Of a stretch of DNA of 64,000 nucleotides, positions 9,709-45,903 are shown piece after piece. This DNA comes from Kudoa neothunni. Taxonomy: Eukaryota; Animalia; Cnidaria. Every line of letters starts with the position of its first letter. Position 1 is the first letter of the stretch. The DNA is taken from contig OZ199839.1 in assembly GCA_964304625.1 (NCBI GenBank), positions 2,358,093 to 2,422,092 on the forward strand, written 5' to 3'. The position numbers and the translations under genes were made by a program. The notes beneath the pieces were generated by a model. The model had not been told where the DNA came from, did not search any database, and saw nothing but the letters and a program-made list of their open reading frames with translations.

Positions 9709-12700
9709 ATGTATCAACATTTATCATTCGCCATTTTATGTAAATTCTAGTAATGGTTTTGTAAAGAGTCATAATTACCAATATTTAGTTTTCTTTATTA
9801 TTTTACTCAATGGATCAATATTAAATGAATTAGAACCCATATATTTCACTTATCAAATATCCAACAATAAATTAAACCCCAAAATTCTCGTTAACATGAG
9901 TGAGACAGAAGACAGCAAATTGTCATGTCGAATCGCCATATATAATTCTAATGGAGTTATTAACAACAGAACTTTTTGTTCTGAATATGACTACAATGAT
10001 ATTGAAGCGGTAAATAATACATTTTGTCCTTTTCAATGCAACAATGGTGTTTCTGTTATATATGACTTTCTATCCGAGAGGCCACAATACGCAAAAATTT
10101 CTTATGGAGTAAATATGGTGAACACTCTCAAATCTACCATCTACGTTATTGGCTTCAAAACACGTATGGTTATTTTAGAAATACATTTTTCTTCAGGTAA
10201 TGACTAATTCTAGCCATTTTGGTTTACCCACAGGTGATAACAACCAAATTTTATATTAACGCATTATCCTACCGAGATGAAGGTGAGAGGTACAGATGCC
10301 CCATATATTATAAAGATAGAAAGTACTCTACCAGAGTTGATATTAATGGTGACAGAGAGAAAATGGAATTATTAATGAACAGTGTATGCAACCAATTCCT
10401 TCCTTATTATGAAATGAGGTGTCCAAGACAACCAAGTTTCTATTATTTTATGCCTGACAAATACATGAGAGCAAACTTACCAAGATATAAACCACAGTTA
10501 ATTGTAACTAGCACAACTTCTAATAATAAAAATAAATACAATTTAAAATTTTTGAATTCCTTTTCGGCGGAAATTTGCAATTTTAGAATAGGAGGTATAT
10601 CTCGATCAATGGTATACCCTCAGGAATACAAATCGAGTTGTGGTAAACGAATAGGAGAAGGAGGAACATACGCTCCAGAATGCTATGCCCCATGTACTGA
10701 CATTCAACTTGATCTTGAAGAATTTCCATTTGTTCATGTAATTATAAAAACAAGGTTTAATGATTTAAATGATTACTCTGGCCATATTTTAAACAAGTTT
10801 GGTAAGATTATTTTATATCTGACTTTATTTATTCTAAATAAATTAATGTGTAGTGTTTAACGAATCAGCTTCAGCTGAGGACGGATTGATTTCAAGCATT
10901 ACTAGTAATGGTGTGGTGTTGAAGAGGAATTTTTACCAAGATGGGAAACATGATGTTCAATTCAATAGCTGTTACACAAAATTGAATACGGGATACTCCC
11001 CCAAACAATCTATGGATCCAAACTTTGAATGTGATGTCGAAAATTGTCAACTAAATTGTTCCACGGTAAAAATAAGTGACCTCTCAGCTGGAATTGATTA
11101 CCAGATAAAAGTAATGGGTGAAGTTACAGGTTATGGTCCTAATCAAGAAACGATGTATTTTATCACCTGTAAACTTATTGAACTAACGTATTTTATTACA
11201 ATAATTTTTAATCATTAGCTAGTATTAAACATTTAAAGAATTATTCTATTTCATTGGGAGAAAAACACGGCACAATAAAACTGAAGGGGAAATTTGAGGA
11301 AACAGACAATGAGGGATTTCCATACACCTGCGCTCTACATATCGGTTTAATGGATGAAAACCTATTTTATGAGGCAACCTGTTTGAATAACTATCCTTGT
11401 CGAAGTTGGTGCAACGATGAATACACTATTTCAGATATAATTCCAACGGCCAATTACATTATAAAAATTATTGTGAATAAAGAATATGGTGAAATAAAAA
11501 TTCCTTGTAATTAATTAAAATATAACATTATATTTAACTAAAAGTGTCTTTAGTTCGTGGAGCTCTCAAGCTTACTTCTCGTTTTATCGGAGGTGGAATT
11601 TCAATCTATGGGCGTTTTCCTTACGCAAATGCGTCAGATTTTACTTGCCGATATATCGTTTATATTGAAAAAGATGAAGCATTTCATCCAATTTACAACT
11701 GTTCTAATGATACGAATATTTTTAAACCCAACAGAAAATATGAATATAATTTCACCTCCTATCTACCTACCCAAATAGAAAATTGTACAACTCTACCTTC
11801 GTGCGATTACTTTGTTCTCACTCATCAATACAATGAAACTAATGAGTATCTCGTGTGCGTGAGGCCTGAGATAGGCATTTCTGAAACAGTGTGTAGAATG
11901 ATTCCTAAAGGTGCCTTGAAGAATTTGTTTAGTTATCATAAATATTGTACAGTAGGTAACCAGTTTTAATCTATATACACATGCATATAAGATTCACTTA
12001 AATGAAATCACCATATTGAAATAATTTAGGTAATAACTATTCATTTAAACCAAAACAAGGAAAAAACATTATTGTATTTATTAATTTAAAACTCTTTTTG
12101 AAATTTTTAGTCATAAATAATATTTTAATGCATTTAATGTATTTTCCCAAAATTTTTTCGAAAAATATTTTTTTATTTTATGTCGCATTAAGTTAGTTGA
12201 ATAAAACCGAATTATTAACTTCTTGTTAGGTAGGATATTCTTGGTCTGATTTTAGCTATCCAATGAGAAGTGATAATTTAATTAACGAAGGGGTTAAGAT
12301 AGGAAATTTTATAGTTGCGTTGTGGTTTCTTTTAAATAAAGAAAAAAATATTTTTTACGTGACGATGTATTGTCTTTTTATACCTCTTCATCTATTTAAT
12401 ACGCATGTAACACTTTTTTGGATTGCTTTCATCGAGTCCTCTTATATACGCGTTCGTCCGCAAAATCGAAATTACTATATATTAAATTCATTATATTATT
12501 ATAACAAAATGAAATATTCAAAAATATTGGCATGGTCATTAACCCTCTAACGGATTTGGGGTGTATTACACTCCAAATCACATTTAATATGGGTATAAAA
12601 TATTACAACCTTTTCATAGAAAATTTAAATTGAGGCTATTTTCTTATACTTATTAAACGTACCATGTATTAAAAACTTGGTTAAAATATAAGTTCAGGTT

Positions 12701-14395
12701 ATGCCCAAAATAGTTCATCCTTTAACAGGTTTGGGGTGAAAACACTCCAGGGTTCTTTTGCTTATATTAACGTGAAAAATTATAAATAATTAGATGAGAA
12801 ACTCCTGTTATATGCAATTGGCAAATTTCCAAGAAAATCTACAATTAGTATCCCACCTAATCCAATGCAGCATTCTTCGTCGATTGCTCGAAAGTTTCTG
12901 GTGGTATATTATTGAGGCTTTCCTGTCTCCTATCAGATGGACGGAGAAACGTCGATTGTGTCAGATATATCGGGTTTTAATAACTAACAAAAGTTTATTT
13001 TTGAATTTTAACGTTGAAAGTACTTCCTGGGAAATTTTATTTTAATTATGCGCCAATTTGGATTGTGTAGACAAGTGGGATTATTTTAGCAAAAAGCTTG
13101 GACTAGTTGGACCGTTCTGGTGGGTGAATTAAGATGAGGGCTTTCATTGAATTTTTTGATGATTTCCACTCCTTTAATGGTGAGTTCGATAATAAATTGT
13201 TTTTTTACGCCACTTAACGCAAGGCCTGTCTATCATTCGTTGAAAATAATCCATGATGATTAGGCCGAACCAGATTAAGTTTTGTAATAGATATAAATAT
13301 ACTCCAAATTCTATCGATAGATTCTACTAAAAATTCTCAATTAAATTCAAATTTATTTTTTGAGTAAATTTAAGCATAAAAAAGGTTGCGATGTTTTTCA
13401 CCCCAGACCCGTTATAGGATGGAATTTTTCGCTAGCTTAGAGGGTTAATTATGTTTGGAAATTTTATTACATAAATTAAATTATAATAATTTATAAATTT
13501 CAGTGTTATAGTAGTTTTTGTATTTTACAACGTAAAACCATTGAATATCGTGATTACTCTAGGTTTTTTTAGTAATACTCCATTTAGATTTAATTTGGTT
13601 AACGGTTGAGATTAAAAAACACGTATTACTTGACAAAAAGGTGATTTTTATATTTTGATTATTTGTTATCCTATTTAATTCTAATTACCTTCAAAATCGC
13701 GTAAAATTCCAAATTGAAATAAATTATTGCTCATTTAATATATACAAATTATGCAGCGTTTTTAAATAACTGTTAAAAGCTGGTTATTTAGTGTGAATTC
13801 CGTGATGTTTAAGTCTAAATAATAAATGTTTCTTAGGGCAACCAATAAACAAATCAAACTTAATTGATATTTTTTATGAGGTTGATTCGGGACAACTCAT
13901 TGTTAACGCTATACTTCCTATGAATATACAGGACCAAAATGCCAAATGTGAATGGGAATTAAGAGACCACAATTCTGATGAATTTTCAATTGTGAAAGAA
14001 TGCACTCGAACTAATCCTAATGACTGTAATGATAAGGAAACATTCTGCAGGAGATTTACCATAACCAATATTGGTGAAAATTATAACTACCACCTAACCG
14101 TATATTATAGTAAAAACCATGAGGTCTATGGGACAGCAAAAATTTTACCAGGTATTTAAAATATATTGATCTTTTTAATTTAAATGTAATTTAGGCAAGA
14201 GTAATAATAATAACTCTGATAGGTAACGTCCATTATCCATATACATACAATTTACATTTTTTAGAGCTAAATCATCTAACAAGTAACACACATGTACTAT
14301 TTTGTTTAATTTTTTTAAGGTCATTAATTTATGTCGTCGTCGGAGCGCTTTGTCTAATGATCTTGCTAGTGGTTATTTTCACTTTAGCAAACTAA
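9709..14395 (+). CDS. R1: ~800-aa type-I membrane protein with Cys-rich FN3-like modules
   Basis: Exons 9709-9739, 9789-10163, 10214-10801, 10854-11168, 11219-11506, 11554-11910, 13837-14151, two stalk micro-exons, and a TM exon ~14320-14395. Signal peptide MYQHLSFAILFFFIILL. FN3 motif ISDLSAGIDYQIKV. TM LIYVVVGALCLMILLVVIFTL. Confidence 0.85.
12543..13444. mobile_element. Non-autonomous piggyBac inside R1 intron 6
   Basis: TTAA|CCCTCTAA...TTAGAGGG|TTAA with subterminal GGGGTG repeats (~12560, ~12735, inverted ~13400). Confidence 0.8.
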
Positions 14396-15359
14396 AGTTA
14401 AAAAATTTTTAATTATTTTCTTTTAGATTTTTTCCTTCAATAGAGTAGTTTACATTGATTACACTTTTCGATTTTTTATATTTCACAATTATTTATCTTC
14501 AGTCTAATTTATGCAATTATTATTGTTGTTCTTTGTAAAAGTCGATGATAAAAGCTATAACCACCTAAATAAACATCTACTTAAACTTAAAGAATCATAA
14601 ATAATTGTCTCAGAATTATATCAACAATTGTTAGACAGTTTATTCTTCGTATTATTAGAAATAATACACTCAATAACTTTTCATATAAGTAATTTTTTTA
14701 AGATCGAAAGATTTTTATAATGTTAGCATTATTATAGAATTTAGAACTTGCTTAGACGCTAACAATCTTAAAACATACGAAAAGGTATATCATTTCCTTA
14801 TTAAATCTCTAATAAACTTTTCTATATTATTTTTTTGGGCGAAAAATTACTTTATTTTAATTCATAGCCTTTCTATGGAGGTATTAGGGTTTATAATGTA
14901 AATTGGGTAAACCGATGTGTAATGTAAAGTTAAAATTTAATTTTATTTGTTTATATAAATATACCTATTGAATTCATATCACAACTCACAACATTCGCGC
15001 GAAAACCACCGAATTAAAATATATCACGTTAAATTGCATATTGTTTTTTATATGATACAAATATTTAAAAATATGAAATTTAATTCAATTATATTTGTCA
15101 ACAAACTATAATTTTTGGCTAAACTTTCCGGTTATTTAGAGTTGTTGGCACTGAAAAATGACGAATAATTATTCCCTATTACTAAATTCCATACTGGTTT
15201 AACCTATAAAGCATTATTCCGCCCGTTTGTGCGTGAGACCAATGGATCTTCAAATAAATATATATATTCTGTTGAAAAAAAATGTCTTTTCGATTTTGAA
15301 GCATCTTAGAGGATCCAAAGGTCTTATTCTTTCATTTTTATAATTATAAAATATATTAA

Positions 15360-17890
15360 CGCTCGAATATCTGGAGCGGACCATTGTGGTCCATTTTTTA
15401 AAAAACCTTTAATATCTTTTCAGGATAATAAGTTATGAATTTCCAATCACGTATATTTAGTGTGTAAAGTTACTAACTATAATGTTAAAATATTAGATTT
15501 TCAGAATTAATCAGTTTGTGAATAAATGAAAAAACAAAAAAAGTTACATAAATACCTGAGTAGGACCACAGTGGTCCGTCTGAAACTAATGATCTAATAA
15601 ACCTTTGAAACATTAAAAAAATTACCGAATTTTGAAAATGTAGTTTTATAACCGATTATAATTTAAATTAAGAACATTAAAACGTATAAATGAAATTTAT
15701 GCTGCGTGGTCAGTGTGCTAGAAAACTTCTAAAACGAGTTCTGATAGAGAAATTAATTTTCTTTAAGCTGAAGATGAAAGTTTTGATGACGTATTATTTG
15801 AAGAAACAGAATCTGATAATGTCGATGAAACCATAAATGAACCAGTCAAGAATGAAGATGATTGCGATGTGAATGACAACGACCAAAGTATTGAAGATTC
15901 TTCAGAAATCTCTTGTGTCTTGTCAAAAGACAGAGAAAAGTGATACAAATCTCCAACAATAACTGAGAGGAGAGTAACACAGGGGAATATACACACGGGG
16001 AAATCAGAATTTTCAAAAGAAGAAAGACTTTTAGGACTGACTCCATTGAGAGAATTTAATAATTTCTTGACCCCTTTTTATACTAGATGAGATCGTATAT
16101 TGCACAAATATATTCATCAAGCTAGAAAAACCCCAACATAAAGTATATTGATTTGGAAGAACTGAACATATATTTGGATGCAATTATACTTATTGGAGTG
16201 GTGAAAGATAAGAACGAGAATATTAGAGTGTTTTCGTGTGGAAAATACGGCCTATCACTCATAATAAAAAAGATATCTAGAAATCGCTTCGAAGAAATTA
16301 CTGCTTCTATTAGATTCGATACCAGACGTAGTAGAAATCGTAATGACAAATCAGCTTCAATTAGACATGTTTTTGACCGCTTCATAAAGATATGCAGGCA
16401 AGTTACCATCCATCATCTAAGTTGACTGTTGGTGAGCAGCTTATAACATTTAGAGGACAATACCCCTTCAATATATTTATTTCATCAAAGCCTGGTAAGT
16501 ATGGGATCAAAATCTTGACGTTATGTGATGCAACAAATGCGTATCTCTGCAACGCAAAAATATACATCGGCAAGAAAAAGGAATAGTTGAAAATAACCAA
16601 GACGAAAATGTAGTGAAAGATCAACTGCAACCATACTTAAACAAATCTCGAAATGTAATCACAGATAATTTTTTTACTACGTTACCACTTGCAACGAACC
16701 TTATATAACATAAGATTACCATTGTTGGAAAAGTAAGAAAAAATAAAAAATTGCTTGTTCACGAATTCCAGTCATTAAAGGGTACAGAAAATAAAATAAA
16801 ATTTCTTTTTCAGGAAAAATATACTCTAGTGAAATTCAACCGAAAGGAAAATAAATCGGTGGTTCACTTAAGCTCTCAACATCGTAACGTTGAGATAAAC
16901 AAGGAATCTACAATTCAACCAAAGGTGGAGTAGATACTCTAGACCAGCGTTCCCAACCTTTTTTGTATCGCGTCCAAACTTTTTCAAATGTATTGATTTT
17001 TAAACTTAAACTGCTTATAATTTTGAATCAAGCTTCATGCCACATTAAAATTAGAAAATGGCAAATATATATTTCATTAAAATTAAAATCTATTCGATCA
17101 GATATAAGTTTATTCTCAGATGGACTTTAAAAATTAACATTTTTACTTCTTCATTCAGTCAAAAACCGCGTTAAGTGAAACTTGTGCTAATCCAAACCGA
17201 ATCAGGCAAAACTTTTCTGTATCCATGGCTTATAAACAAAAATTAAATAATTAATATTTAAAATTAATCAATATTGTTTTTGGATAAGTCAAAAAAATGG
17301 GGATCATGGTCACAATGCGACAACATTGGAATTATCTCCATTCCGATTCTATTGAGAAAAAACCATGTTAAACGTTTTTATATTTTGTATATACATTAAT
17401 CAGTGTTTCAGTATCATTTTAGGATATTCACATTCTCTTACAAATAAACGATGTCAAAAATCGAAGTATTTATTTCAATGTGCATCACACTGCCCAATTA
17501 TCGCACCATTATCCATGTCGCTTCAATGCCCGGGATTTTCCACGTCCTACAAGAGCCGTTCATTAAACGTTCTAAAATTTCCATGCCCAACATAAGTTTT
17601 CCACGCCGCAGGTTGTGGAACAATGCTCAAAATCGTATTATCCGTTGCTATTCCACCAAGAGAGCTACTCATCGTTGGCCGATGACAATTTTTTTCAATA
17701 TAACTAATATAGCTGATTACAATGATTATCTCTTGTACGTTAATATAACTCCTTAGTTCCATAAAGACAATAAAAACCAATCAAGAAGAGAATTCTTGAA
17801 AATGCGTGCTGAAGAATTACTTGGAGACGACGATACTTCCAAATCAATCCAGACTAAAAAACAGACTATTTTTCCATAAACGTGCCTTAA
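15360..17890 (+). mobile_element. Decayed piggyBac (PGBD4-like transposase pseudogene); right end not defined
   Basis: TTAA-flanked left end with GGACCA-TGGTCC repeats. Frameshifted motifs RNRFEEITASIRFD, LTVGEQLITFRG..SKPGKYGIK, TDNFFT, GGVDTLD, YSTKRATHRWPM. Confidence 0.85.
16945..17625. mobile_element. hAT (Buster/Charlie-like) MITE nested in the piggyBac transposase
   Basis: TIR CAGCGTTCCCAACC / GGTTGTGGAACAATG. Degenerate 8-bp TSD CTCTAGAC / CTCAAAAT. The piggyBac reading frame resumes after it. Confidence 0.65.
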
Positions 17891-18597
17891 AAAAATTTTT
17901 GGTGAATGCCTATTAATCCTTCCATTTTAATAAGGTACGATTTTGAAATTTTAGTTATTATCATCCTATTTCAGTTTATTAAAATTGCTGTAAATATAGA
18001 AATACAATATTCTTTAAAATGTTTTAGTTTTGTTTTGGATGAAATTTTAAGTACATATCATCCTGAGAATTTAAAATAATATCATGTGTATAATTTAATA
18101 GTATACATTGGGATCGAAATGATTTAGTATTAGGGCTTTGTCATTTTATACTAATGCTACTAGCTCAAGCTTTAATAACATAATAAAAACACGTTTTCTG
18201 TTTCTATGAGTTATATTAAAATACTCTTGGTTTATTATGTAACATATGAAATCAAATGAATAATCCCCTCGCTGGGAAACAACATATCATTTACTGACTT
18301 ATTGTAAGGGGAAGATTTTTTTTAGTTTCAGAAAAATATACACTCTATGATTATTTAAGAAATGAGCATAATATATTTTATTAATGTTTAAAGGATTATT
18401 CAGATATTAACACCTTATTTTTTAATTTTATATATTAAGATTAGTGTCAAATTCATATATAACTTTTACTGTTAAAAATTATTATTTTCAAAGTAAATAA
18501 CAGTCATTATTCATATTTGAATTCTGGGAGCTTTTTGACCAGTATATTTCTCATAGGGCTGGATTTCCGAAGTTAATAATATTGTGGCATACTAACC

Positions 18598-21482
18598 ATG
18601 ATCAACTACGATTTTTCCGTCGTCTTATTTTGTAAATTACAGTTGATTTTATTAGGTACAATATATAATTAATCAAATGTAGCATTATTAGTTAATTTGT
18701 TTGGTTGGCCTGTCCTACTAATATCCGATTACCTCATTTATCAATCTCTCAATGAAGAAACTGAAACCAATATTATCATAAAAATATCTTCACCAATAGA
18801 AAATGGAACGATGTGTAAAATTTCTCTTTACAATTCCATTGGAATTATTCCACCAGGAAAGTTATGTATTGAAGCTGATAATGGTGGTGGGACAGATGAT
18901 GAACGGGTTACGAGTTGCAAATTCGAATGTAGCACTTCCCTATCTATTTTAACGGATTTTCTAACCCAGAGATTACAGTATGCGATAATTTCTGTTGGTA
19001 TAAATATAATACAGCTGGATAAACCATCTGTTCTTGTATTTGGTTTTCAGACGCGTAACTTTTGATCACAACTAAATGCTGTACCAAATAAAATATTGTA
19101 GCTCCTTTGATATATCCTCAAGTGAAAACATCAAAATATTTTAGGTATCGATATTACCAAGGAAGAATCTTAGTGAAGTTTGGGTGTCCAATTTACTATA
19201 ATGATAGAAAGTATCATAATGGTAATGTTGATGGTGGGATTTTCAGTGGTTATGAAATGGAAATTATGCTCAACCAATTTTTGCCTTATTATGAAATGAA
19301 ATGTCCGAAACAGCCTAGTTTTTATTACTTTATGCCCAATAAATACATGCGCTCAATGTTATCTCTATACAAACCTCGGTCCATGGTGACACGACAACGT
19401 TTACATGATAAATTGAATATATACAATATTTCTGTCTATAATTTTTATCCTGCAGACATCTGTCATTTTAGTATACGGGGCTTATCTGAAAAAGGTACAA
19501 AACTAAAAGAATTCACGTCCTATTGCGGTCAGAATTGTGCGTGTATCGGTTGTTACGCTCCTTGTCATAATGCTCAACTTGTCCTAGAGTTGTTCCCGGC
19601 AGTTGAAATAGCAGTAAGATCTAGATATAACAATTTAACCGATTATAACTCAGGATATATACATAAAAATATTGGTATGATTATTTTATAATTCATTGAT
19701 CAATTTAAATGATGTTTAGTGTTGATTCGACAAAAAATAACAAACACAGGATTTTTATCAAATATAACCACCAACAGCGTTATATTACACAAGGAGTCAT
19801 TCCAATCTGAAAACGATGTTTTACAATTCACAAATTGTCATACTAAATTATATATAAGAGGTCAGTCCCTTAAACTCCTTGAGGATAAATTCGAGTGTGA
19901 AGAAGTTGACTGTGACACATTTTGCCATTCGCTAAAATTAAAGGACCTTATTCCGGGCACATCATATCAGATAGATATTAGAATTACCACGAAAAATTAT
20001 GGTTATTTTCATGAAACGATTTTCTTTGTTACTGGTAATATATCTATTTATATATAGATTATTTAATAATAATAATAATAATGTATCGTTATCAATATTG
20101 ATATTGATAGAGGGTTATAAGACTATAAAGAATTATACCTCATCACTAGGTGACGAACCAGGAACGTTGAAAATAAGACCCATATTCGAAGAAACAGACG
20201 AAAATCAATATCCATATACTTGTGAATTTTATATTAGTTTAAAGGATAGACAGCAATTTTATGAACCAATCTGTGTCGGCAATTATCCTTGTATTGGATT
20301 ATGCAACAGTGAATATACCTTTGTAAATATTACCACGACTATTGATTACAGTATTAAAATTGTGGTTAATAAAAGACACGAAGAAATAGAAATTCCTGGT
20401 ATCTAGTTTATATAAAAGTGAGATAATTTCCTGAGTAATTCTAGTTGTTGGGTCTCTCAAACTCAGTTCTAGTTATATTCGTTATGGATTTACTCTCTAT
20501 GGAAATTTTCAGTTTGCAAAATCTTCCGAATTTTTATGCAATCATAATGTTTATGTCAAAGAAGCTAGAGAATACAAATTGATTTATACTTGTCTTGATT
20601 TTTCAGATATACTAAAACCCAAGGAGAAGATAAGCTACAATTATTCCGCTCCTCGATTTGATATGCTTGGAAAATGCACACAAACTCCATCATGTGACAT
20701 GTTTAATATAGAATATCAGTATAACGAAACCCAAGAGTATTTGGTTTGTGTGAAACCATTGGTGAATGTAACTAATGTCAAATGCAGAACGATCCCCAAA
20801 GGTATCCCAAGAATTATATCTTAATGACAATATATCAAAATAATAATATTTTTTATGTTAGGGCAACCGAAAAAACGACTCAAACCTAATAGATGTTTCT
20901 TTCAAACGTGTCAATAATGAATTTTTAGTGAAGACTAAACTTCCAAATTGGATAAGTGATACTGAGACGAATTGTGAGTGGGAGTTAAGAAATCCTGACG
21001 CGGACACATTTCCAATAATCCAAGAGTGTTTTGGTAGCAGCGGAAAAGATTGCACTGAAATGGATATAATCTGCAATAGCTTTACCATATCTAATGTTGA
21101 AGACAAACACAGTTATCATCTGACTGTCTATTACACTAAAAATAAGGACGTCTATGGAATTGCTACAATCAATTTAGGTGTTCGAAAATTTGAATAAGCT
21201 ATTTAACCATTTTATATAGGTGAACTGGTAAGTAATAAGCCGAAAAAGTATTTTTTATTAAAGCAATATTTAACAACAATAGATATAATGTTTTAAGTTT
21301 GATGACTCTGTTAAGTAATTTTGAGGGATTGTCAGTTTTGATTAATTTTAGAAAAACAACAGTTATCGTCGTATCAATCATAATAATATTACTAATTACA
21401 GTTTATTTTGTAATTATATTTTGGAGGTATGATAAATAATCAATCTGAAGTCTTTAATTTATTTTTTAGATCAAAGCAATAA
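18598..21482 (+). CDS. R2: type-I membrane Cys-rich FN3-like protein, paralogue of R1
   Basis: Same exon and phase structure as R1. Signal MINYDFSVVLFSLLVNLFG. FN3 motif LKDLIPGTSYQIDI. TM VIVVSIIIILLITVYFVIIFW, tail RSKQ*. Stalk micro-exon boundaries are less certain. Confidence 0.85.
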
Positions 21483-27265: not shown

Positions 27266-29237
27266 CCCATTCAGGTTCTAATTTTGTATTTTTGTAAGAT
27301 TACAATATTAGGTAAAACTAACAATATTATTATTGATTTTAAAAATACTATTTTAAAATTTCATCTCCTTACAAAGATACGTAGGTTTTTGCAATGTTGC
27401 GAAAACGCAACGAAAAACTTAAGTGGTATATAAATTTGTGTGTCACGTGACAAATGAAATTAACAAAAACATTGAATTTTAAACAATAATTTAGTAATAC
27501 CTATGTGACATATTATCGAAAAATTTATATTTTTTTGTTTTCTATATTTTTTAATGATATGGGTTGTAGTACGTTTGAGTGTCACTCGGTCTTCTTAGCC
27601 CAGATTAGCGATAAAAAATTATTTTTAGTTCATATTTCAACAATATTTCCTTACTAGTAACAAAACCTCTAACTAATCCCTTATTTTGCCATGTGAGATT
27701 AAATTTTACACCTTTAACCCATTTAACTTACAATTTTGTAGTTTTTACATATCTGGTATTAGACTTAATAACGATTATAATAATCATCTAAAAAAATAAT
27801 CGAAAAAAATTAAATTATAAAAGAGTATATTCGAGAAGTATTTAGATTCCAAAAATGCAATGAAAAACTTTCCTTGTATGGGAATAAGATTACAACGCAC
27901 ATAAATAATATTTGTCAAATACATGAGAAAAAAAAGTTATCTACAAACAAAATTATAATTTTAATCATTAACTTGTGGAACAGCCCCGAGCACTTTATAT
28001 GAATATGATTTCCACAACTTTTACAAATATGGACAGTAATGTTTTTACATACCACACACCTACGTCTTATTTTGTGAGGATGAGACACCAATGTTGGTTT
28101 ATTACATAGATTTGCGTTCTGCAATTTACCCAACAGAGACTTTCGGCCAATGCTGGTTTTTGTGGATGTTACCAAGTCAGTCACTATATTCCTGACATGT
28201 TTCAACAAGTCAATTTGTGTGTTATTTACAATATTATAAATCCTCCATGAATTTACTACTGCCATTGATATCATATTCGTAAAAATGGGCCAATACCATT
28301 TTTTTCCTTTTATGTTAATTCTATAACAAGAAATTAAATTATCGGCAATATCTACTCCACCCATAAACTTATTATATGCACATATCATAAATGGCTGACA
28401 AATAGTAATTTCTTTTTTCTTCGACCTACAGTATCTTTTGATGCTTTGGAGAGGGTGAGCGGTGTAGCAATTACTCAATGCGATAACAGGTTTTGTATCA
28501 TTCCATTGAATGCAATGAATACCTTGTTGATCATCAGAAAACATCTCAAATTCTCCCCTTGGTTTTTTTGTCATTACTTGTTGGGGAGTAACAGGGCAAT
28601 TTGATATTCTGTTTGATCTTAACGTTCCAGTAGTCTTGATATTTCTTCTTTTGAGCTCTTGTAATAATTTATGAGAAGTAAAAAAATTATCGAAGAACAT
28701 ATTGAGACCTTTTTCATTTTTTGCTTCATCCGCAAAAGAGATTACGGAACTACCACCCAAACCATATTTTTTATCATAATTTGCTGACTTTCCACTATAC
28801 ACATCCAAACTATACATGTAACCGAAGGATGATGACATAACCCACTGCTTGAAGCTGAATCTAATTGGTTTATTTTTCATAAACATTTTAGCGGAATGCC
28901 TACCAGTATAAGGTACCATCTGTTCATTCACAGATGTATATTTTTCAAATATTCCAAATTTTTTGAAATTTTTGTTAAATTCTTAAATTAAAGGGCGTAC
29001 CTTGAAAAATCTACCGGTAATGTCAATATTTGAATTACTAAAATGAATGAATTTTTTTAGATTTGAAGCGTTTGTACGCCACCGAACTTTTAACAAGTTC
29101 AACACTAATGTCTGGAGAAGGTTCCCAACACATAGACTGGCGTGCTAATCTATGACAACCAGACAAAATCAAAATTCCAATAAAAGATTTCATTTAAATA
29201 ATCGTAACATGAGAGTTATGGTTGTTATTCTGGCTCG

Positions 29238-34743: not shown

Positions 34744-35475
34744 TAATGGACTGGTCGTGCTTAGCACCGCTCTTACCTACACCAGTTATTTTACATATTA
34801 AAAGGTTCGCCCATATTTAATATAATTTAAAAAATTACGTAATTTTAGAATTACGTGCATTAAATAGTTTATAAGCATAGTTACTACGAATAAACGAAAA
34901 ATAAAAAGTCACGTTAGGATCGGTCGAACGTACCTTTTTGCTTTAACCGCGTGATTAAATTCAGCGTTTTCTTTTTTTTCACTGGATTTAAACAATTAAT
35001 AAGCTTCTATAGGTACAAAAATATGGCAGGTAGTTAAAAAGTGAAGGATAAACATAGGCACATGTTGAAAATATTTGGTAATGTGGTTTATAATGGTGTC
35101 CCCCATAATCCATGGTAGTAACAATGATGCAATGATATTCCCTTCCCAACGATTCAGATATTGAAGATGATTTTGTTGATAAAAATTTGAACCTTTCAAA
35201 GGCGGTCTTATCTCATTTAGAAGAGTTTGGCAAGTATTTTAAACATCATGGTTCAAAGACATGAAGCAAATATCTGATCTTATTTCAAAGTTTATTAAAT
35301 TTAAGTAGTATTTTCCAAAATAAAAATAATTGTTTTTCCTGCAATTCTTAAGCTACAGCTAATCTATTATTTAATACGTATGTGCACTTGCGCAATAAAG
35401 TACGTATTATCCGGCCGGGACCGGTAGTACGTGCAATTCCCCATCCCCAAGGGGATTGCATACGACCGATCCATT
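34744..35475. repeat. ~730-bp TIR-bounded dispersed repeat, copy 1
   Basis: Ends AATGGACTGGTCGT / ACGACCGATCCATT. Colinear similarity to 51486-52207. Confidence 0.7.
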
Positions 35476-36572: not shown

Positions 36573-39501
36573 ATGATGTATAAAAAGATATCTCTTGTGA
36601 TTCTCAGTAAGAATAAAACAAAATTTCTTAACAACAACTTAATTGTAGTTTTGACGATTAATTTACTTTTGGGGGTTGCCTTTTTGGAGTCCAAAAATTT
36701 TACTTATGAAGTTATAAACAATCCGAACTGGATAAAAATCGTCATAAATAGATCCCCTAAAATAAAAAATGGACTTAGATGCGAGATTTCTATGTACAGT
36801 TCAAATGGAAAAACAAACGAAGGAACCTTATGCGTTGATGATAAAGAAAATGGTAACGATCAAGAAGTTAGTGGTTGCCAATTCGAATGTGGTAGTGTCG
36901 CATCTGTTTTATACGATTTCCTATCAGAGCGACCAAAGTACGCCATAATTTCTGTTGCATTAAATTCGCCCAACCCATCAACTAACCCTACTGTTGATAT
37001 ACTTGGATTCGAAATTCGTACGATTATATTTTCTCTACTGAGTACATTATAATAGAATCCATTAGCACCTCTATTTTATCCACAGGTCAAAACGTCTGGT
37101 TTCTATATTTATCTGAATAGTGAGAGGAAAGCTGAAAAAAATGTTTAGATGTTCAATCTACTACAACGATAGAATGTATTATAATAGTGACAACGGTAAA
37201 AATGGATTTGGATCCAATGAATTATCTATTGATACTTTGCTGAATCAATATGTTCCTTATTATGAAATGAGATGCCCCAATCAACCTAGTTTTTATTATT
37301 TTATCCCCAACAAATATATGCGAACGATTTCACCTAGATATCAACCTCAATCTGTAGTAACCAGAATTCGCTCCCCTGACAACAAGATAAAATACAATAT
37401 TATGATTTCAAATTTCTTTCCTCAAGAAATCTGCCACTTTAGTATAAGAGGATTATCTCAAGAAGAACACAAACCAAACGAATACACGTCTTTATGTGGA
37501 CAGAGTTGTGTGTGTTACGGATGTTACGCCCCTTGCCATAACACTCAGCTTTACCTTGAATCATTCCCGGCTGTAGAAACAGCTGTAAGAACTAGACATC
37601 ATAACTTATCAGATAATAATTCTGGATATATACACAAAAATATTGGTACTTATAATTTGCGTCTATAAATCTCATCGAATATTTAGTGTTCAATAATATC
37701 GAAATAATTTCAAATGGAATCTTGTCTGATATAACAAGAAATAGTGTATTATTACACAAAGAAATATTTCTTAAAGGAAATAATGAGCTTCAATATACAA
37801 GCTGCCACACATTTTTACACCCTGGAGACCAACCCAAAATCTGGCTCCAAGATAATTTTGATTGTGAAGGCGCAGGTTGTGAATCCAAATGTGACTTGTT
37901 AAAAATCAAGGATCTTTCTCCTGAAACGTCGTATCAGCTAGATGTTATTGTTGTTGTCGCCATTTATGGTTCGTTCATGGATAAATTCTATTTTGTTACA
38001 AGTAATTTCAAAATAGATAAAAAATATAGGATTACTTATATATTGTTATTATATTAAGAGGGTGAAAAGACAATGAAAAATCATGCATTTTCATTGGATT
38101 ATGGAACAGAAAGGGTGACATTTAAAGGGGAATTTGATAAAACAGACGACGGCCAATATCCTTATACTTGTGAAATTTATATTAGCTCAATGCAGAGCAA
38201 TATATATTATGAAGCCACTTGTATTGACAACCTTCCATGCCGTGGTTATTGTAATGATGAATACACGATTATTGATATTATTTACACCGCTGATTATAAT
38301 ATCAAAATTTTGGTCAATAAAGCACATGAAGAGATAAAAATCCCATGTAATGAAGGATTAAATAAGTGACGAATTGGTTATATTGATGTTTTTAGTTATT
38401 GGTTCACTTCAACTCAGCTACAATTTTATTAATGAAGGCGTAAAAATTCGTGGACATTTTCCTTACGAAATAGCAGCCAATTTTAAATGTCATTATAATG
38501 TTTTCGTGAAACAAGTTGATAAATTTAAATTGATATACACATGTCTTGGTTTTGAGAATATTTTGAAACCAGGGGATCAACATAATTCTATGTTTGTTAT
38601 AAATCAATATGAACGACCTGGTAAGTGTCTAAAAGCTCCACTTTGTGATAGTTTTGATTTTACGACGAACTACAATGAAGAAATGGAATATCTTATTTGC
38701 GTGAAAGCGTTGATGGTTCCACCTATAACCAAATGTATAACGATTCCTAGGGGTAATCATAAATATTCTTTAATTTATTTTAAATTATTTCCACAAAACA
38801 CATTGATTAAATAAACGTTATATAAAAGATAGACCCAAAATTACAACTTTCAAAAATGATGAATACGTTTCAACAAATTCGAAAAATAAGAAAATTATCT
38901 TAAAAGCTATAATTAACGATCAAAAATATGATAATTCGGTAATATTTGATTGGGAATTAAACAATGTAGATTCTGATGTTTTTCCAACTTTGAAACGATT
39001 TCTCAAACCCGACCAAAGTGAATGTACTAAAGATGAATCGTTTTGTATGATCTTCAATGTATCTAATGGCAGTCAAAATAAAACTTATCGTCTTACCACC
39101 CATTATGGAGATGGCTCTTACTACTACGATATTGTAACAATAAAATTAAGTATATACATTTTATTTAATATTTGTAATTATTTTCTTTCCCATAGCTCAA
39201 TATACTATTGCCAAAACGTAATTTTCTACTATTAAATTTAATTAATTGTTTAAATTAGGCCCAAAAAATTACAAGAGTAATCCAATTTTCTTTTATAGTT
39301 GATAATATTAAATAAATATTATTTTTTAGTTACATAATTATCTTTGTCGTTATATTTGAGGGTATAATAATTTTGATAATTACAATCGGCTTGAATTTCC
39401 TTATAAGGTAACACTGCTTATTATATTGTTTATTTTGATTTCAATATAGAAAGCTGAATGCGAATAGCACCATAAAACCCATTTCTGTTAATGAGCTTTG
39501 A
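36573..39501 (+). CDS. R3: type-I membrane Cys-rich FN3-like protein, paralogue of R1
   Basis: Same exon and phase structure. FN3 motif IKDLSPETSYQLDV. TM YIIIFVVIFEGIIILIITIGLNFLI, tail RKLNANSTIKPISVNEL*. Confidence 0.85.
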
Positions 39502-40014
39502 TATTGTTTCAATTATGTCAATTAATATATAATTCTTTATTATTCATTTGGGATTTAAAATATTTATCATTTATTAATCCTTATATTTTTTATTAATTAT
39601 TAATTTTACGAGTTAAACTTGATACGATTATCCAAGTTGATTTCAACACAGTATTTTTTAACTCTACCTTTTTACAAATCTTAATAAATATTAATGGGAA
39701 ATTACCTGGAATATTTTCGACGCGTTAAGTACCAGTATTATTCTCTCATTAAAATAAACTTAATTAAATTATGTTTTTTAAATTTATAACTATGTTTAAG
39801 GCCATGACATATTAATCCTTATTGTTTCGTTGCGATTACATTGATTTTTAGCAGTCTTATAAAATGTTAATTATAAATTTATTTATTTATTTATTAATAT
39901 TTTTTAAGTGACGTTGTCAAATTATAACATTATATTTCATTCGATTAATCCAATTTTTAAATTAAGAATTATTTACTTCCGAATACAAAACAAAATAACA
40001 AAATTATCTGTATA

Positions 40015-40246
40015 CAGTCGTGCCTCGGTGTTGTGTAATAGTCCAATATCTCTTGAATTTGGTCTGTTTTAGTTAAATTGAAAACTACTTTAGATATATT
40101 AATGTTAACATCATAAAATGGATGTAAAAAAATCTTTTTAAATAAACGAAAGTATATATTATTCGATATTTTGAAGTGATTTTGCATTGCGTAGTAAAGT
40201 TGAATCCCCGATTTACTTCGCAACATGCAATATTGAGGTTTGACTG
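40015..40246. mobile_element. pogo/Tigger-like MITE
   Basis: TA|CAGTCGTGCCTCG ... TGAGGTTTGACTG. Confidence 0.5.
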
Positions 40247-41096
40247 CATATACAGAATTTAGTGCACTATAGTTTTAATGATTTTGTTAATCAATTATAT
40301 TTATTTCAAAAAAATTCTACGGAAAATAAATTAAGTTTTTAAAAAAACATCATATATATTTATAATTTTAGTTTTTGATTTTTCAAAAAAATATCAAGAT
40401 AATAAAATTATTTCAATTTACAGAGCCATCTAAACATTTTTTTTAACAAATATTAATTTGAACTTATAATTGAATATTTAAGATATAGATTTACATAGAA
40501 TTTAAACAAATTAAATATCTTAATAGGGGTTTCTGATAATTGGAAATTTAAATTATAAATAGTTTTTATTATTTAAATATTGTAGTTGTGTATACTAGTC
40601 ATTTATTATTTTAATTCGAAGTTAATACAAACAAAATTAAAACATTTAGAAAAAATGAAATTTTACCATTTCATTTTATATTATAAAAAAATGATGTTCA
40701 TTAAACCCACATATTTAATAATTATTATAATTATGCTATTTTTAAAATATCGATAAATAAATTGTATAAACAGAAGAAAATATTCCACACACAGCTTATA
40801 GTTATCATTTTCATTAAACATCGTGTAAATATTCCTATTATTGCTGAAATAATTTGTGAAAGAATTATTCATAACGATTAAGCTTTTAACAAAGAAAATA
40901 TCCTCATAAAATTAATTTCAACGTGAAATCAATAAATCGGTAAGAATCTTGTTTCTTAAAAATTTTTATTCCAATTCAAATATAACTCATAATTTGTTAT
41001 ATTGGTTCAATTTTATGTTTAAAAATATATCTATTCATTATATTAAAAATATGATTTATAAAATTACAAATCTGGTAACTCTTGAAAAATAATTAA

Positions 41097-42417
41097 CCCT
41101 ACGGAGTAAGCGTGGGGTCTTTTAGACTCCATGTGATTTTAACATTGCAAAAACATTTTTCGGTTTAAGCTAACGACTCGTAATTAATTGTTTTTGCATA
41201 TTTTTTACAGACATTATATGGATTTAAATTGTTGAAACGTTGTCTACGTTTTACGAATGATTCTTCAATACCATCGGAGTCGTCTAATGATAGATTTTTT
41301 ATAATTAGAAATGTTACTAGTCTCATAAAATCAATCTTCTTAAAATATTATACTCCAACAGAATATTTAATAATTGACGAAATGCTTTGAGCGTTCAGGG
41401 GCAACTATATTTTTAAACACTACATTCCGTTAAAGCCTGCGAGATGTGGCATAAAAATTTTTAATATGGCTGATGCCAAAACATTCTATACCTTAAATAT
41501 TGAGGTATACCTAGGTGCCTAAAATGTCGGCAATCATAAAGTTGATAACTCACCGGAAAATTTAGCACTGCGATTAGTTGGACCATTATTAGGTTCCGGT
41601 AGAAACGTTACGGTAGATAATTGGTTTTCCTCAGTTCGTCACTTCGAAGAATTATTGAAACATGATATCACTGCATGTGGTACTATTAGAAAAAATAAAA
41701 AGAAGATTCCTCCAGAATTTTTACCATCGAAGACAAAAGAGGTTTATACATCTATGTTTGGCTCTACCAAAGATTTTACATTGCTGTCGTACATTCCGAA
41801 AAAAAAACAAATCCGTCATATTATTGAGTGTTTTTCACCGCAAACCAGTAATCGATTCAAATCGTCCTCAGAAGCTTCCATAAATGATTTTATTTTGTCA
41901 TTCCACCCAGAGAGGTGTAGACACAATCGACCAACTGTGCCCCAATTATTCTACATATAGAACTACCCGAAGATGGCCAGAAGTAATATTTCATGCGCTT
42001 CTAAATGTAGTTTCAATAAATTCATATGTAATTTATTGTTTGCATACGAAGGAAAATATTCGGGGAAAAGAATTCTTAAAATTGTTAGCAATACGATTAC
42101 TAGAACAACAAATGAATCGCAAAAGTACAAATCTATTTATTTAATAATAATATTAATGTAGATGAGGCAAAAACTAAAGAATGTGAACAAATATCTACTG
42201 TTACAGCCAGAAAAAGATGTCATATATGCGATATCTTTAGTGATCGTAAAACGCAATCAAAATGCAATATTTGCAGAAAACATTCTAAAGTTTTATGCAA
42301 CAATTGTTTTGTTAAAAGATGATTATTTTATTAATTAAAACGTTTTATTTTCATTGTGGGGTCTAAAAGACTCCACGCGTGCTCTCGCATAATAATTTTT
42401 GCGTATGATCCGGAGGG
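41097..42417 (+). mobile_element. Internally deleted piggyBac with transposase remnants
   Basis: TTAA|CCCTACGGA...TCCGGAGGG|TTAA. Motifs IIDEML, GRNVTVDNWFSS, GTIRKNK, GVDTIDQLC, TRRWP and a Cys-rich tail. Confidence 0.9.
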
Positions 42418-43040
42418 TTAAGGAAAAATAGATCTAGTTTAACCCATTATAAAGATGCAAAACATTTTTTCTCATTCTGAAGAGCATATAATATAAAATA
42501 AAATTTAAAGGAAATAATTATTTTTAGTTATCTTAAATTTTATTATGTTATATTGTCAAAATAAATAATATTACTTAAAAATAATTGTTATTGCAGTGTG
42601 AAATATTAACAAAATTAAATATTGTTAAACTTCAAAAACAATTAAAATTATATTATTTATGCTGAACAACATCATAAAGTATTTTTAAATATTCATTTGC
42701 GTACAACTAATTATTCCCTAGATTCTTACTTTGTAAAACCACACCAAAATTTAAATAATAGCATTATAAAAAAATATATTTGATAATCCGTTAAATTTCC
42801 ATAATAAAATGTTGCTTAATTTTATAATATAAAATAAACATCATTTTTACAATAAAAGTATGAATGAAATAAAACTCTAAAATTAAGACTAAATCATAAA
42901 TGACAAAATTATATTAATTGAGATTATCATAGGATGTGCTGTTAAACTCGTCGCGTATAAAATCTTCTTATAAAATTTTAATACTTTTAGGTGTAGTAAT
43001 TAATTTCATATTTTCAAAGTGTCGGTAAACACTAAATACA

Positions 43041-45903
43041 ATGAATAGAATCAATCTTATCATATCAGTCGTTATAGTTAGTATATATTTATAAATATTT
43101 ATTGTTTTCCATATCTTATGTATAGCAACCATCACCAATGTATTTGTTAAATCAAGAAGTTTCAACTACGAAATCATCAGACATCACAATACATCTACAT
43201 TTAGACTAAACTTTGGAGACATCGACGAAAGGAATAATAAATGTTTGGTTACTTTAATTAATCCCATAGATTTTATTGTAAGTGGACCACCATGCAAGAT
43301 GATAGCAAGTAAACGGCCGATTTCATACTGCAATACGACATGCGGTACCGAATTGTTGTTCACTTATGATTTACCCTCAAGGAATTCAAAATATGCTGTA
43401 GTTTTAATTTTTACCAACTCCTTTGAAGAGTCGGGGGTAGTTAAGCATATACTTGGTTTTCCAACGCGTACATATATTTATATATACTTAATTATATAAG
43501 ATGAATACAAATTTTAATATTTAGCACTCTTGGCTTATCCGCACGTAGAGATAGATGTTTCGAACAATCAAATTTTAGCTAACATTATAACATATCCTAT
43601 TGGTGATTGTTTTATACATTACAATAATGTAATGCTGCCAGCGTTGAGAAGAAACACTGGATATCCACCAATACTTCAATTGTATAGTAGGATATCGCTC
43701 GATTATTACATGTCACATTGGGAAACAAGATGTACAAGACAGCCTATTTTCTATTACTACTTACCCAACAAATATATCAGATCGACTTTTGAAGTGTACA
43801 GACCCCAATACAATGTGGAATACATATCTTCGTCTGCTGGGGGAAATTATCATTTATACTTTACAAATTCATTCTCTGTAGATATTTGCCACTTCAGTAT
43901 AGGAGGTATAACTAGAGAAGATGAAACACCAGTTGAATACAGCTCGGTTTGTAGTAAAAGTGAAGCGGACAAAGATTGTTACGCTCCTTGTAGGGACGTT
44001 GAGCTTTCTTTAGATCGATTTGAAATTGTGAAAATAGTCATAAGAATAAGACATCATAATATGGGAGATGTAAATTCGGGCTACGTCAATACAAAGTTTG
44101 GTACCATTTATTTGTTTTCATCAATCGGACTTACATAAATTTAGTTTTCAATGCTTTAGAAATTTCTAAACACATGCTGATTTCAAATATTACTAATAGT
44201 AGCGTTGTCCTAGATAAAACGTTATTTAAAATACCAAAACCCGATGTAAATTTCAATTATGAGAGTTGCGACTCGAAGGTTTACTTGGCCAACTCAAACC
44301 AAGCTCGTGCTGATGTAACATTATACTGCGATGATAACATCAATTGTAACACTACGTGCACTCTGATACAAATTGATCGACTGGAGCCAGCTACCATGTA
44401 CCTAATATACATTGAGCTAATTATAAATCCAAACATTCGTCATGTGGAAAAGGTATTCTTTAAAACAAGTATGATAGCCACTGGTTTATACATGATAATT
44501 TAACATGTTAAATAATAGATGGGAATAACGGTTCAGATTTTTTTATCTTAAAAAAAGGAGCTATTCTTAATACGTTTATTATAAGCGGAACTTTACCTAA
44601 ACCACAGCAGGCGCAACTCGAATATACATGTGTTTTTTATGTCAGTCTTATGGAAAGCGACTTATATTATGAGGCAATCTGTGCCAAACTACATTCCTGT
44701 CGTGGATTATGTAATAATGAATACACAATTACTGGAATTGATCCTACTGTTAATTATAAAATAAAAATTGGTTTTCATAAAGTATACAACGACCTGATAT
44801 TACCAAGTATATTATTTCAATCGATTTTATTATAATGTAATTGTATTCATCCCATAGTTAATGACAGCCTTAAACTTAGCTACAGTCTTAATAATGAATC
44901 AATTAAAATCTATGGTTCCTTTCCTATCTCAACAGCATCAAATTATACATGCCATTATAACGTTTTTGTTGAGCACATCGGAGCCTTCCAATTACTTTAC
45001 ACTTGCCTCATGGACATGAATTTTATCCCATCCACTATCAGGAATGATTACAACATTACAAATGTTACTGGGGACGTTAAAAAGACATGTTTGGCGCCTC
45101 CTTCTTGCGAATATTTTGATTTGGTTGATTACTACAATCGATCCAAGGAATATCTTGTCTGTGTGAAATCATTCGTAGAGGCATCCGAACCTAAATGCAT
45201 AACAATTTCACAAGGTAATTAAAAAATAAAAATTTAATTCTCTATTAATAAATAATACGATTATTATTACCAATATAATTACAGACCAAACAAAATTAAA
45301 TGTAATTGTTTCACGGGGTCAAAACTACGCGAATGTTACCGTGTTGCTCCCAAAACAACTAAGACTAAGGGATCAAGTGGCGAAATGTTACTGGAAGTTG
45401 ACAGCAGTATATGCCGCTAAAGTTACCGTGACGAAGCAATGTTTAAAAACTAATATCTTTGATTGTGGCGGGAGCATTCCGCTTTGTAGCAATTTTTCAA
45501 TTTTCGATATCGACCCTTATCGTAGCTATAATTTGATTGTCTATTATATGAAAGACGAGAATATCAATGGATCTACTGTTATAAGGAAAAGTAACCAGTT
45601 AATGTAAATTTTATTTAGATTTTATATAGAAATAGTAGAATATGAGCCTGCTTCTTCAATGTCTAGAAGTGCAAAAGTACAGCCTGTGAAGTAAAATACC
45701 CATTTCGTATGTCTTTTATTCTTGTTTAGGTCAAAAAACAAACTAAAGTAGAATATACAATTTCACGTTTTTACTTATATATATATATATATATATTTAG
45801 AATAATAATTCCTATCACTATCATGACAACCGCTGTTGTAGTCGGTTGTGTGGTTACTATCTGGTTGTTATACAGAAAACCTAGTTATCACTTATTTATT
45901 TAA
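43041..45903 (+). CDS. R4: type-I membrane Cys-rich FN3-like protein, the most divergent paralogue
   Basis: Same exon and phase structure. Signal MNRINLIISVVIV. FN3 motif IDRLEPATMYLIYI. TM IIIPITIMTTAVVVGCVVTIWLLY followed by RKP. The exact 3' end is uncertain. Confidence 0.82.

What the first reader, a model, noticed from the sequence alone, without database searches (positions are those of the whole stretch)
9709..45903. Tandem array of four intact, hyper-divergent Cys-rich FN3-like surface proteins of an unrecognised family
Seen: R1-R4 all splice into open ~800-aa frames with signal peptide, six large ectodomain exons, micro-exon stalk, one TM and a tail of about 2-17 aa. Cysteines and splice phases are conserved while most intervening residues differ. 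Established: the L-x-P-x-T-x-Y-x-I-x-V motif in exon 4 is the FN3 tyrosine-corner signature, and weaker versions occur in exons 5 and 7. Inference: I do not recognise this architecture as a known family. A diversified, tail-less surface-protein cluster in TE-rich DNA fits a variant surface antigen, host-recognition adhesin or allorecognition-type locus.
Basis: partly seen in the sequence, partly recalled or inferred. Interest (0 to 1): 0.85.

Follow-up and report, generated by a model that had tools for sequence, protein, structure and literature searches.

The report
Hidden surface-protein family of Kudoa parasite
These four genes belong to an apparently undescribed family of several hundred look-alike cell-surface proteins in a fish-muscle parasite (Kudoa, a microscopic relative of jellyfish), and the family is a strong candidate for the variable coat with which such parasites stick to their hosts or evade host immunity.

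Summary
The array is real. The genome matches Kudoa neothunni (Myxozoa; 40.2 Mb, three chromosomes). R1-R4 are 776-796-aa type I membrane proteins with a signal peptide, seven beta-sandwich modules in six phase-1 exons, a micro-exon stalk, one TM and a 2-17-aa tail. AlphaFold plus structure search confirms FN3 for exon 4; the modules carry extra cysteines that are lost in pairs. Corrections: R2 and R3 are one base out of frame at their homologous splice sites (error or lesion unresolved), and the four genes are not a special locus. They are old members of a genome-wide family of at least ~230 copies (probably 280-450) whose architecture recurs in four other samples. Younger arrays are module-level mosaics. 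Selection is mostly purifying (omega 0.22-0.33), with only weak positive selection in distal exons. No named homologue or prior description was found. Best reading: a non-signalling host-contact repertoire (variant antigen/adhesin), by analogy only; no expression data were obtainable. It fails the tests for Hydractinia Alr, VSP and cytokine-receptor membership. The scan has noted this family many times elsewhere in this genome.

The parts
9709..14395 (+). R1 gene, open 796 aa. Exons 9709-9739 (signal peptide), 9789-10163 (module 1), 10214-10801 (modules 2+3), 10854-11168, 11219-11506, 11554-11910, 13837-14151, stalk micro-exons 14195-14222 and 14265-14282 (predicted), TM exon 14320-14395 (2-aa tail)
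12539..13448 (.). piggyBac-type non-autonomous element (TTAA ends, 13-nt perfect inverted arms, about 40 genomic copies at 71-84%) inside R1 intron 6; explains the 1926-nt intron
18598..21482 (+). R2 gene. Exons 18598-18631, 18683-19054, 19102-19674, 19720-20034, 20111-20398, 20445-20801, 20862-21177, stalk 21220-21247 (predicted), TM exon 21352-21426/21439, possible 3' micro-exon 21470-21482
20862..20892 (+). R2 frame break at the start of exon 7 (one extra base beside an A6 run) or use of the downstream AG at 20892; assembly error versus real lesion unresolved
19720..20034 (+). R2 exon 4 module, folded: FN3 beta-sandwich, pLDDT 84, pTM 0.74; best VIA Z 9.5 (rmsd 3.0, 82 aligned) to fibronectin FN3, all 50 listed rows FN3-containing proteins
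10214..10801 (+). R1 exon 3, the family's most conserved exon; predicted as two Ig-like sandwiches (pLDDT 67, pTM 0.47); carries the P-[HY]-Y-E-x-x-C and C-[YF]-A-P-C signatures used for genome-wide counts
36573..39501 (+). R3 gene. Exons 36573-36606, 36649-37017, 37066-37645, 37687-38001, 38059-38346, 38396-38752, 38829-39149, stalk 39196-39217 and 39259-39276 (predicted), TM exon 39330-39407/39411, probable tail exon 39450-39501 (17-aa tail); module 7 has lost its first two Cys together
37096..37141 (+). R3 frame break in exon 3 (exon one base longer than a multiple of three; A7 run at 37135-37141 is nearby); assembly error versus real lesion unresolved
43041..45903 (+). R4 gene, open 795 aa. 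Exons 43041-43080, 43126-43467, 43525-44100, 44145-44468, 44519-44806, 44858-45214, 45285-45590, stalk about 45639-45690 (predicted), TM exon 45801-45903 (about 9-aa tail); groups with a subfamily 7.6 Mb away (C2:9.97-10.06 Mb), not with R1-R3
27918..28982 (-). piggyBac-like transposase remnant (PF13843, E 2.6e-46) between R2 and R3
41523..42319 (+). piggyBac-like transposase remnant (PF13843) between R3 and R4

Best explanation
R1-R4 are four old members of a very large (at least ~230, probably 280-450 copies) lineage-specific family of Kudoa cell-surface glycoproteins. Each is a rod of seven beta-sandwich modules (FN3-type where tested) with extra cysteine pairs, 7-16 N-glycosylation sequons, one TM and almost no tail. 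Shown: gene anatomy, FN3 fold of module 4, paired Cys loss, purifying selection, module-level mosaicism in young arrays, and the same anatomy in other samples. Inferred: the proteins do not signal by themselves but form the parasite's host-contact coat. Tandem duplication and segmental gene conversion between phase-1 exons keep generating new combinations of distal modules. Different members would be shown by different stages or cells in fish muscle, blood or the annelid host, serving as adhesins and as a changing antigenic face. Old subfamilies such as R1-R4 probably hold distinct, retained binding roles, while the young arrays supply variation.
For: Genome identity. Copy number: motif counts 261 vs 27 control and 223 vs 13; 367-492 first-look candidates and 150/150 scored hits at 200 bits or more; 48 further loci from a divergent subfamily's exon 5. 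FN3 fold. Tails of 2-17 aa with no ITAM or WSxWS; a full gene in another sample ends Y-K-K-K-stop. In 15 young copies each exon's tree rejects every other exon's tree (AU p<0.002); L010/L020 have dS 0.59 in exon 2 and 0 in exons 5-6. Omega 0.22-0.33, with positive-selection signal only in distal exons 2 and 3 (p 0.015, 0.010; omega_s 1.5-1.6) and none in exons 4-6. Stage-changing antigens are reported for Kudoa thyrsites and other myxozoans without a known molecular basis (PMC8481699; bioRxiv 10.64898/2026.02.11.705288).
Against: The positive-selection signal is weak, borderline after correcting for five tests, and recombination inflates it. Mosaicism occurs in any tandem array. R1-R3 keep one consistent tree across exons. 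Subfamilies are shared with other samples, which fits conserved roles better than pure antigenic turnover. The family is not confined to chromosome ends. Kudoa spends much of its fish phase inside muscle cells.
Confidence: 0.55

Rival explanations
1. Parasite-parasite recognition or adhesion code, working like Hydractinia Alr or chelicerate sDscam: homophilic, isoform-specific binding that organises cell-in-cell development, sporogony or mating.
For: One domain per exon, tandem clusters and extreme paralogue divergence resemble Alr (PMC9546547), and myxozoans are cnidarians. sDscam FN3 domains top the Foldseek list, though only at E 1.5e-3. Old subfamilies are retained across samples.
Against: Alr has V-set and I-set domains, a single FN3-like ECS lacking the tyrosine corner, and often ITAM/ITIM tails. 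Here there are seven modules, a tyrosine corner and no tail motifs. Hundreds of dispersed copies in an animal of a few cells is excessive for a self code. Structure matches are generic.
Confidence: 0.17
2. Host-ligand capture or decoy receptors: tandem FN3/Ig arrays that bind fish cytokines, complement or nutrients, acting through a co-receptor or as sinks.
For: The exon 3 model's best Foldseek rows are two-domain cytokine-receptor ectodomains (IL-2Rg, Tie2, IL-13Ra; E 3-9e-4). Disulfide-rich FN3 modules and a C-x-W in module 7.
Against: TM-scores are only 0.25-0.34 with 7-13% identity, which any two-sandwich model would give. No WSxWS or Box1. The C-x-W lies on a different strand than in cytokine receptors (my reading of alignment A7). 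No sequence match in PDB.
Confidence: 0.13
3. A structural coat or extracellular-matrix-like protein (spore valve, plasmodium surface) whose family was amplified largely neutrally by unequal crossing-over in a repeat-rich, fast-evolving genome.
For: The genome is 45.6% repeats (PMC12239612); purifying selection dominates; identical tandem copies exist (L013 = L014); some copies are broken (L029; possibly R2, R3).
Against: Most sampled copies are intact (24 of 26 loci match exons 2-6 in single frames; 97 of 104 junctions allow an open phase-1 intron). Keeping about 5% of the gene count in a genome that lost two-thirds of its ancestral genes argues for selected diversity. Divergence is higher in distal than in proximal modules.
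Confidence: 0.13
4. Assembly or annotation artefact (haplotype duplication, host DNA, chance ORFs).
For: About 7x coverage assembly from a tuna sample; single-base frameshifts in R2, R3 and L029.
Against: Copies are 16-61% identical, not haplotypes; AT-rich 41-76-nt introns are typical of Kudoa; omega is well below 1; independent samples hold the same architecture.
Confidence: 0.02

Closest known systems
Hydractinia Alr allorecognition family (PMC9546547)
   Same: Cnidarian; clustered, highly divergent single-pass Ig/FN3-like proteins; each domain and the TM on its own exon; extra disulfides in the sandwiches.
   Different: Alr has 41 loci in one complex, 1-3 V/I-set domains plus one FN3-like ECS without tyrosine corner, and tails often with ITAM/ITIM. 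Here there are hundreds of genes on all three chromosomes, seven modules with the tyrosine corner, and 2-17-aa tails. No sequence link was found or could be tested directly.
Taeniid EG95/45W oncosphere antigens (PMC2671473)
   Same: Parasite multigene family of surface FN3 proteins with signal peptide and C-terminal anchor, proposed adhesins, host-protective antigens with positively selected sites.
   Different: EG95 has one FN3 domain, a GPI anchor, three exons and about seven genes. Here there are seven Cys-stapled modules, a TM and hundreds of genes; unrelated phylum, convergent.
Diplomonad VSPs and VSP-like genes of Sphaerospora molnari (bioRxiv 10.64898/2026.02.11.705288; PMC11792419)
   Same: Signal peptide, large Cys-containing ectodomain, one TM, very short tail, multigene family in a parasite (one a myxozoan); proposed antigenic variation.
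   Different: VSPs have more than 10% Cys, more than five CXXC/CXC motifs and a conserved tail motif. R1-R4 have 3.6-3.9% Cys, 0-2 such motifs, FN3 folds and unconserved tails.
Fibronectin type III domain (PF00041)
   Same: Module 4 folds as FN3 (Z up to 9.5); tyrosine-corner motif in exons 4, 5 and 7; best Pfam fn3 E 8.8e-5 among exon 5 members.
   Different: Below the Pfam cut-off for the window's exons; no conserved Trp in modules 4 and 5 (only 2-4 Trp per protein); two conserved Cys pairs per module, three in module 6 of the window's subfamily.
Chelicerate sDscam, receptor tyrosine phosphatase and ROS1 ectodomains
   Same: Tandem FN3 repeats before a TM; among the structural hits.
   Different: Matches are generic, none stands out; no Ig-loop head, no catalytic or long tail. 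Possible distant ancestors only.

Membership tests
FN3 fold | Seven-strand beta-sandwich with FN3/C2 topology | tested here: met
   Exon 4 model pLDDT 84; all 50 VIA rows are FN3-containing proteins, Z 8.2-9.5; Atlas TM up to 0.68 to fn3 clusters. Tested only for module 4; exon 3 gives two Ig-like sandwiches at lower confidence.
FN3 fold | Tyrosine-corner motif L-x-P-x-T-x-Y-x-I-x-V | tested here: met
   Strict in exon 4 of R2, R3, R4; loose in R1 and in exons 5 and 7; Tyr at least 90% conserved in alignments A2, A5, A7.
Pfam fn3 PF00041 | Score above gathering threshold (25 bits); conserved strand-B Trp | tested here: not met
   Best window exon 15.9 bits; no conserved Trp in alignments A2 and A5.
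FN3 fold, modules 1, 5, 6, 7 | Same fold as module 4 | tested here: inconclusive
   Profile-profile: exon 4-5 prob 82%, E 1e-5; exon 2-5 E 0.002; exon 5-7 E 0.003; exon 6-7 E 0.06.
Hydractinia Alr | N-terminal V-set domain, then I-set domain(s), then one FN3-like ECS lacking the tyrosine corner | tested here: not met
   Seven modules; tyrosine corner present; the N-terminal module shares the Cys pattern of the FN3 modules, though it was not folded.
Hydractinia Alr | Single exon per domain, clustered divergent paralogues | tested here: met
   (exon 3 holds two modules)
Hydractinia Alr | Cytoplasmic tails, many with ITAM/ITIM | tested here: not met
   Tails 2-17 aa, no ITAM
Hydractinia Alr | Homophilic binding and allele-linked fusion phenotype | not testable with these tools
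   needs experiments
Diplomonad-type VSP | More than 10% Cys and more than five CXXC/CXC motifs | tested here: not met
   3.6-3.9% Cys; 0-2 motifs
Diplomonad-type VSP | Signal peptide, one TM, short tail | tested here: met
   tail sequence is not conserved among R1-R4
Class I cytokine receptor | WSxWS motif and Box1 tail | tested here: not met
Variant surface antigen system (functional class) | Large multigene surface family diversified by recombination | tested here: met
Variant surface antigen system (functional class) | Strong diversifying selection on exposed domains | tested here: inconclusive
   M8 vs M8a p 0.015 and 0.010 in exons 2 and 3, not significant in exons 4-6; recombination present
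Variant surface antigen system (functional class) | Mutually exclusive or switching expression at the cell surface | not testable with these tools

The most novel reading that the evidence does not exclude
This is a var/VSG-scale antigenic-variation system in an animal: several hundred disulfide-stapled FN3 coat proteins, about 5-8% of the gene count, expressed one or a few at a time per cell generation and reshuffled exon by exon, shared across Kudoa and related marine myxozoans and missed by published annotations.
Probability: 0.25. Interest if true: 0.88.

Novelty: new variant of a known kind. Interest (0 to 1): 0.62.

Why it matters
Myxozoans change surface antigens between stages and persist despite fish immunity, but the molecules are largely unknown, and there are no vaccines. 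A family that may make up 5% or more of the genes of an animal that lost two-thirds of its ancestral genes is the obvious candidate. It makes the question testable: exon-level probes for single-cell expression, antisera, host-ligand screens. FN3 surface antigens are the basis of the successful taeniid vaccines, so conserved proximal modules are plausible vaccine or diagnostic targets. It also adds a new Cys-stapled FN3 module and a second case, after Alr, of a cnidarian expanding sandwich-domain surface genes. The four genes in this window add little beyond the family itself.

Tried and rejected
The joined models were built only inside a script to check frame, length and composition and were never searched or folded. 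Sequence searches that gave no named relative: Pfam, PDB sequences, word-indexed homologue searches, ESM Atlas features, viral folds. Rfam found nothing in the window. A high exon 6-exon 7 profile score came from contaminated alignments and was discarded after a clean comparison. Rejected: cytokine-receptor orthology, VSP membership, Alr membership, mosaicism among R1-R4 themselves, strict subtelomeric location, and Sphaerospora molnari as the source (40 contigs, 7 chromosomes, different telomere repeat). The organisms behind the four other samples could not be named. No contig looked human.
Full report
Source. The window is G000:C2:2358093-2422092 of a 40,260,978-base assembly in four contigs. 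A single (TAAACC)n array ends C2 at 12.04 Mb. PMC12239612 describes Kudoa neothunni from yellowfin tuna as 40.2 Mb, N50 12.0 Mb, three chromosomes plus mitochondrion, one (TAAACC)n telomere, median intron 49 bp, 5,316 predicted proteins, 45.6% repeats, QV 48.5, about 7x k-mer coverage, and almost no parasite RNA reads. The identification is therefore an inference from a close match. That paper does not mention fibronectin or surface proteins.

Observation. Four + strand genes are present with the stated anatomy. All core introns are GT-AG and phase 1, and exon lengths match between copies. R1 and R4 are open (796 and 795 aa). R2 and R3 each carry one extra base when spliced at homologous sites and stop at residues 665 and 162. 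Both breaks lie beside A runs, and both can be bypassed by downstream AGs at the cost of conserved residues. With 7x HiFi coverage an error is plausible, but I could not test it. The proteins have 28-30 Cys (3.6-3.9%), 7-16 N-glycosylation sequons, 2-4 Trp, and no RGD, WSxWS or ITAM. R2 and R3 have a good donor just after the TM, giving 4- and 17-residue tails. R1 ends two residues after its hydrophobic segment, so a GPI-type signal is not excluded. Identities between copies are 16-61% per exon.

Fold. Exon 4 of R2, folded with 27 relatives, gives pLDDT 84. All 50 listed VIA matches are FN3-containing proteins (best Z 9.5, rmsd 3.0, 82 aligned), and none stands out; Foldseek and the Atlas agree. 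Exon 3 folds less well (pLDDT 67, pTM 0.47) as two Ig-like sandwiches, so the ectodomain has seven modules in six exons. Exons 4 and 5 are homologous (hhalign 82%); exons 2 and 7 link weakly to exon 5. Each module has four Cys, and they are lost two at a time: Cys 2+3 in exon 2 of L008 and in exon 4 of L007, Cys 5+6 in exon 6 of 18 sequences, Cys 1+2 in exon 7 of R3. This implies disulfide pairs (inference).

Family size. Exon 3 finds at least 150 matches with each of three queries, from 367-492 candidates; the 150th profile hit still scores 200 bits. Two independent motifs occur 261 times (control 27) and 223 times (control 13). An exon 5 from a distant subfamily finds 48 more loci, mostly at other places. 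The lower bound is about 230 and my estimate is 280-450, roughly 5-8% of the predicted gene count. Copies lie on all three chromosomes, dense near both ends of C3, the right end of C1 and the right half of C2, but also internally; this window is not subtelomeric. Of 26 other loci examined (biased to good exon 3 matches), 24 match exons 2-6 in single frames, and 97 of 104 junctions admit an open phase-1 intron in a permissive search.

Range. A full HMMER scan of 1.84 billion representatives gave 17 hits; the ten looked up were unnamed and came from short Logan or ENA contigs. The nine traced come from four samples (SRR31175926, SRR33849685, SRR33529766, ERZ28624939) with GC of 17-39% and the same exon order. 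L036 is a complete gene ending in a TM and three lysines. A SNF5 gene on a related contig of that sample is only 44% identical to that of G000, so the sample is a distant species, presumably another myxozoan (inference). Some foreign sequences group with K. neothunni subfamilies (P0001 with L008/L015, 99%), so subfamilies predate speciation. No named protein was hit, which suggests the family is absent, too diverged or unannotated in the public myxobolid proteomes; I could not check that those are in the library.

Evolution. In the window, R1, R2 and R3 group together in five of six exons (exon 6 is unresolved), and R4 groups with copies 7.6 Mb away: the array is old and composite, and not demonstrably mosaic. 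In 15 younger copies from other arrays each exon rejects all other exons' trees, and pairs are identical in some exons but have dS above 0.5 in others: segmental exchange between neighbours. Omega is 0.22-0.33 under M0; M8 beats M8a only in exons 2 and 3 (p 0.015 and 0.010, omega_s 1.5-1.6, on 16% and 5% of sites). This is my own implementation with fixed trees, and recombination biases it upward, so the evidence for diversifying selection is weak. The low omega is the best evidence that these are real genes in the absence of RNA.

Mechanism. Shown: anatomy, fold of one module, copy number, purifying selection, mosaicism, conservation in other samples. Inferred: a long glycosylated rod with no signalling tail, presented outward, whose distal modules vary most, is what parasite adhesins and variant antigens look like. 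Stage-changing antigens are documented for K. thyrsites and others (PMC8481699), and the S. molnari preprint says the molecular mechanisms were unknown before its own VSP-like candidates. I give 0.55 to a host-contact repertoire (adhesin plus antigenic variation), 0.17 to parasite self-recognition, 0.13 to host-ligand capture, 0.13 to a structural coat amplified largely neutrally, and 0.02 to artefact.

Comparison. It resembles Hydractinia Alr in exon-per-domain design but fails on domain order, tyrosine corner and tails. It resembles VSPs in topology but fails on Cys content and motifs. It resembles taeniid EG95 as a parasite FN3 surface family but differs in size and anchor. Cytokine-receptor hits are generic. 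Literature searches found no description of an FN3 surface family in myxozoans; subscription papers were not searchable.

Verdict. A real and apparently undescribed large family, a new variant of a known kind (parasite variable surface families) built from a new Cys-stapled FN3 module. The window's array is a small and old sample of it, with two of four copies of uncertain integrity. First readers of this scan have noted the same family in many other windows of this genome; those notes are not independent evidence. Interest 0.62.

Noticed in passing
window:12539-13448: piggyBac-type MITE with TTAA ends and perfect 13-nt inverted arms in R1 intron 6; about 40 copies genome-wide at 71-84% identity.
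   Followed up: yes
window:16126-16422, 27918-28982(-), 41523-42319, 60705-61184, 62162-62824(-): Decayed piggyBac-like transposase pieces, PF13843.
   Followed up: partly
window:55689-57225(-): ETF-ubiquinone oxidoreductase gene (PF05187, E 3e-45 for the last exon), an ordinary housekeeping neighbour.
   Followed up: partly
window:5499-6360 / 7444-8295 and 34786-35475 / 51516-52206: An 870-bp inverted duplication (78%) upstream of R1 and a 700-bp direct repeat (75%); probably transposon remnants.
   Followed up: no
L034:1942-7201 and G000:C3:1355653-1362285: SNF5/INI1 lies within 3-6 kb of a family gene both in a distant species' contig and in K. neothunni, but on opposite sides; may be old linkage or chance given hundreds of copies.
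   Followed up: partly
L029 (G000:C1:16546830-16550312): A copy with frame breaks in several exons but otherwise close to its neighbours; a pseudogene or a low-coverage, error-rich stretch.
   Followed up: partly
L013 and L014 (G000:C2:9841798-9849637): Two tandem copies 4.4 kb apart with identical coding sequence over exons 2-6; very recent duplication or assembly duplication.
   Followed up: no
L010-L030 exon 6: The young subfamily carries a Ser/Thr/Pro/Gln-rich insert inside module 6 and lacks its third Cys pair, unlike R1-R4.
   Followed up: partly
G000 loci, e.g. C2:9.47-9.74 Mb, C1:16.15-16.19 Mb, C3:10.06-10.17 Mb: A second, more divergent subfamily not caught by the exon 3 searches; its architecture was not examined.
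   Followed up: no
L031 (G000:C2:5426127-5426748): Only a 3' fragment of SSU rRNA was found, joined to unrelated AT-rich DNA; the intact rDNA array seems unassembled or was missed by the strict search.
   Followed up: no
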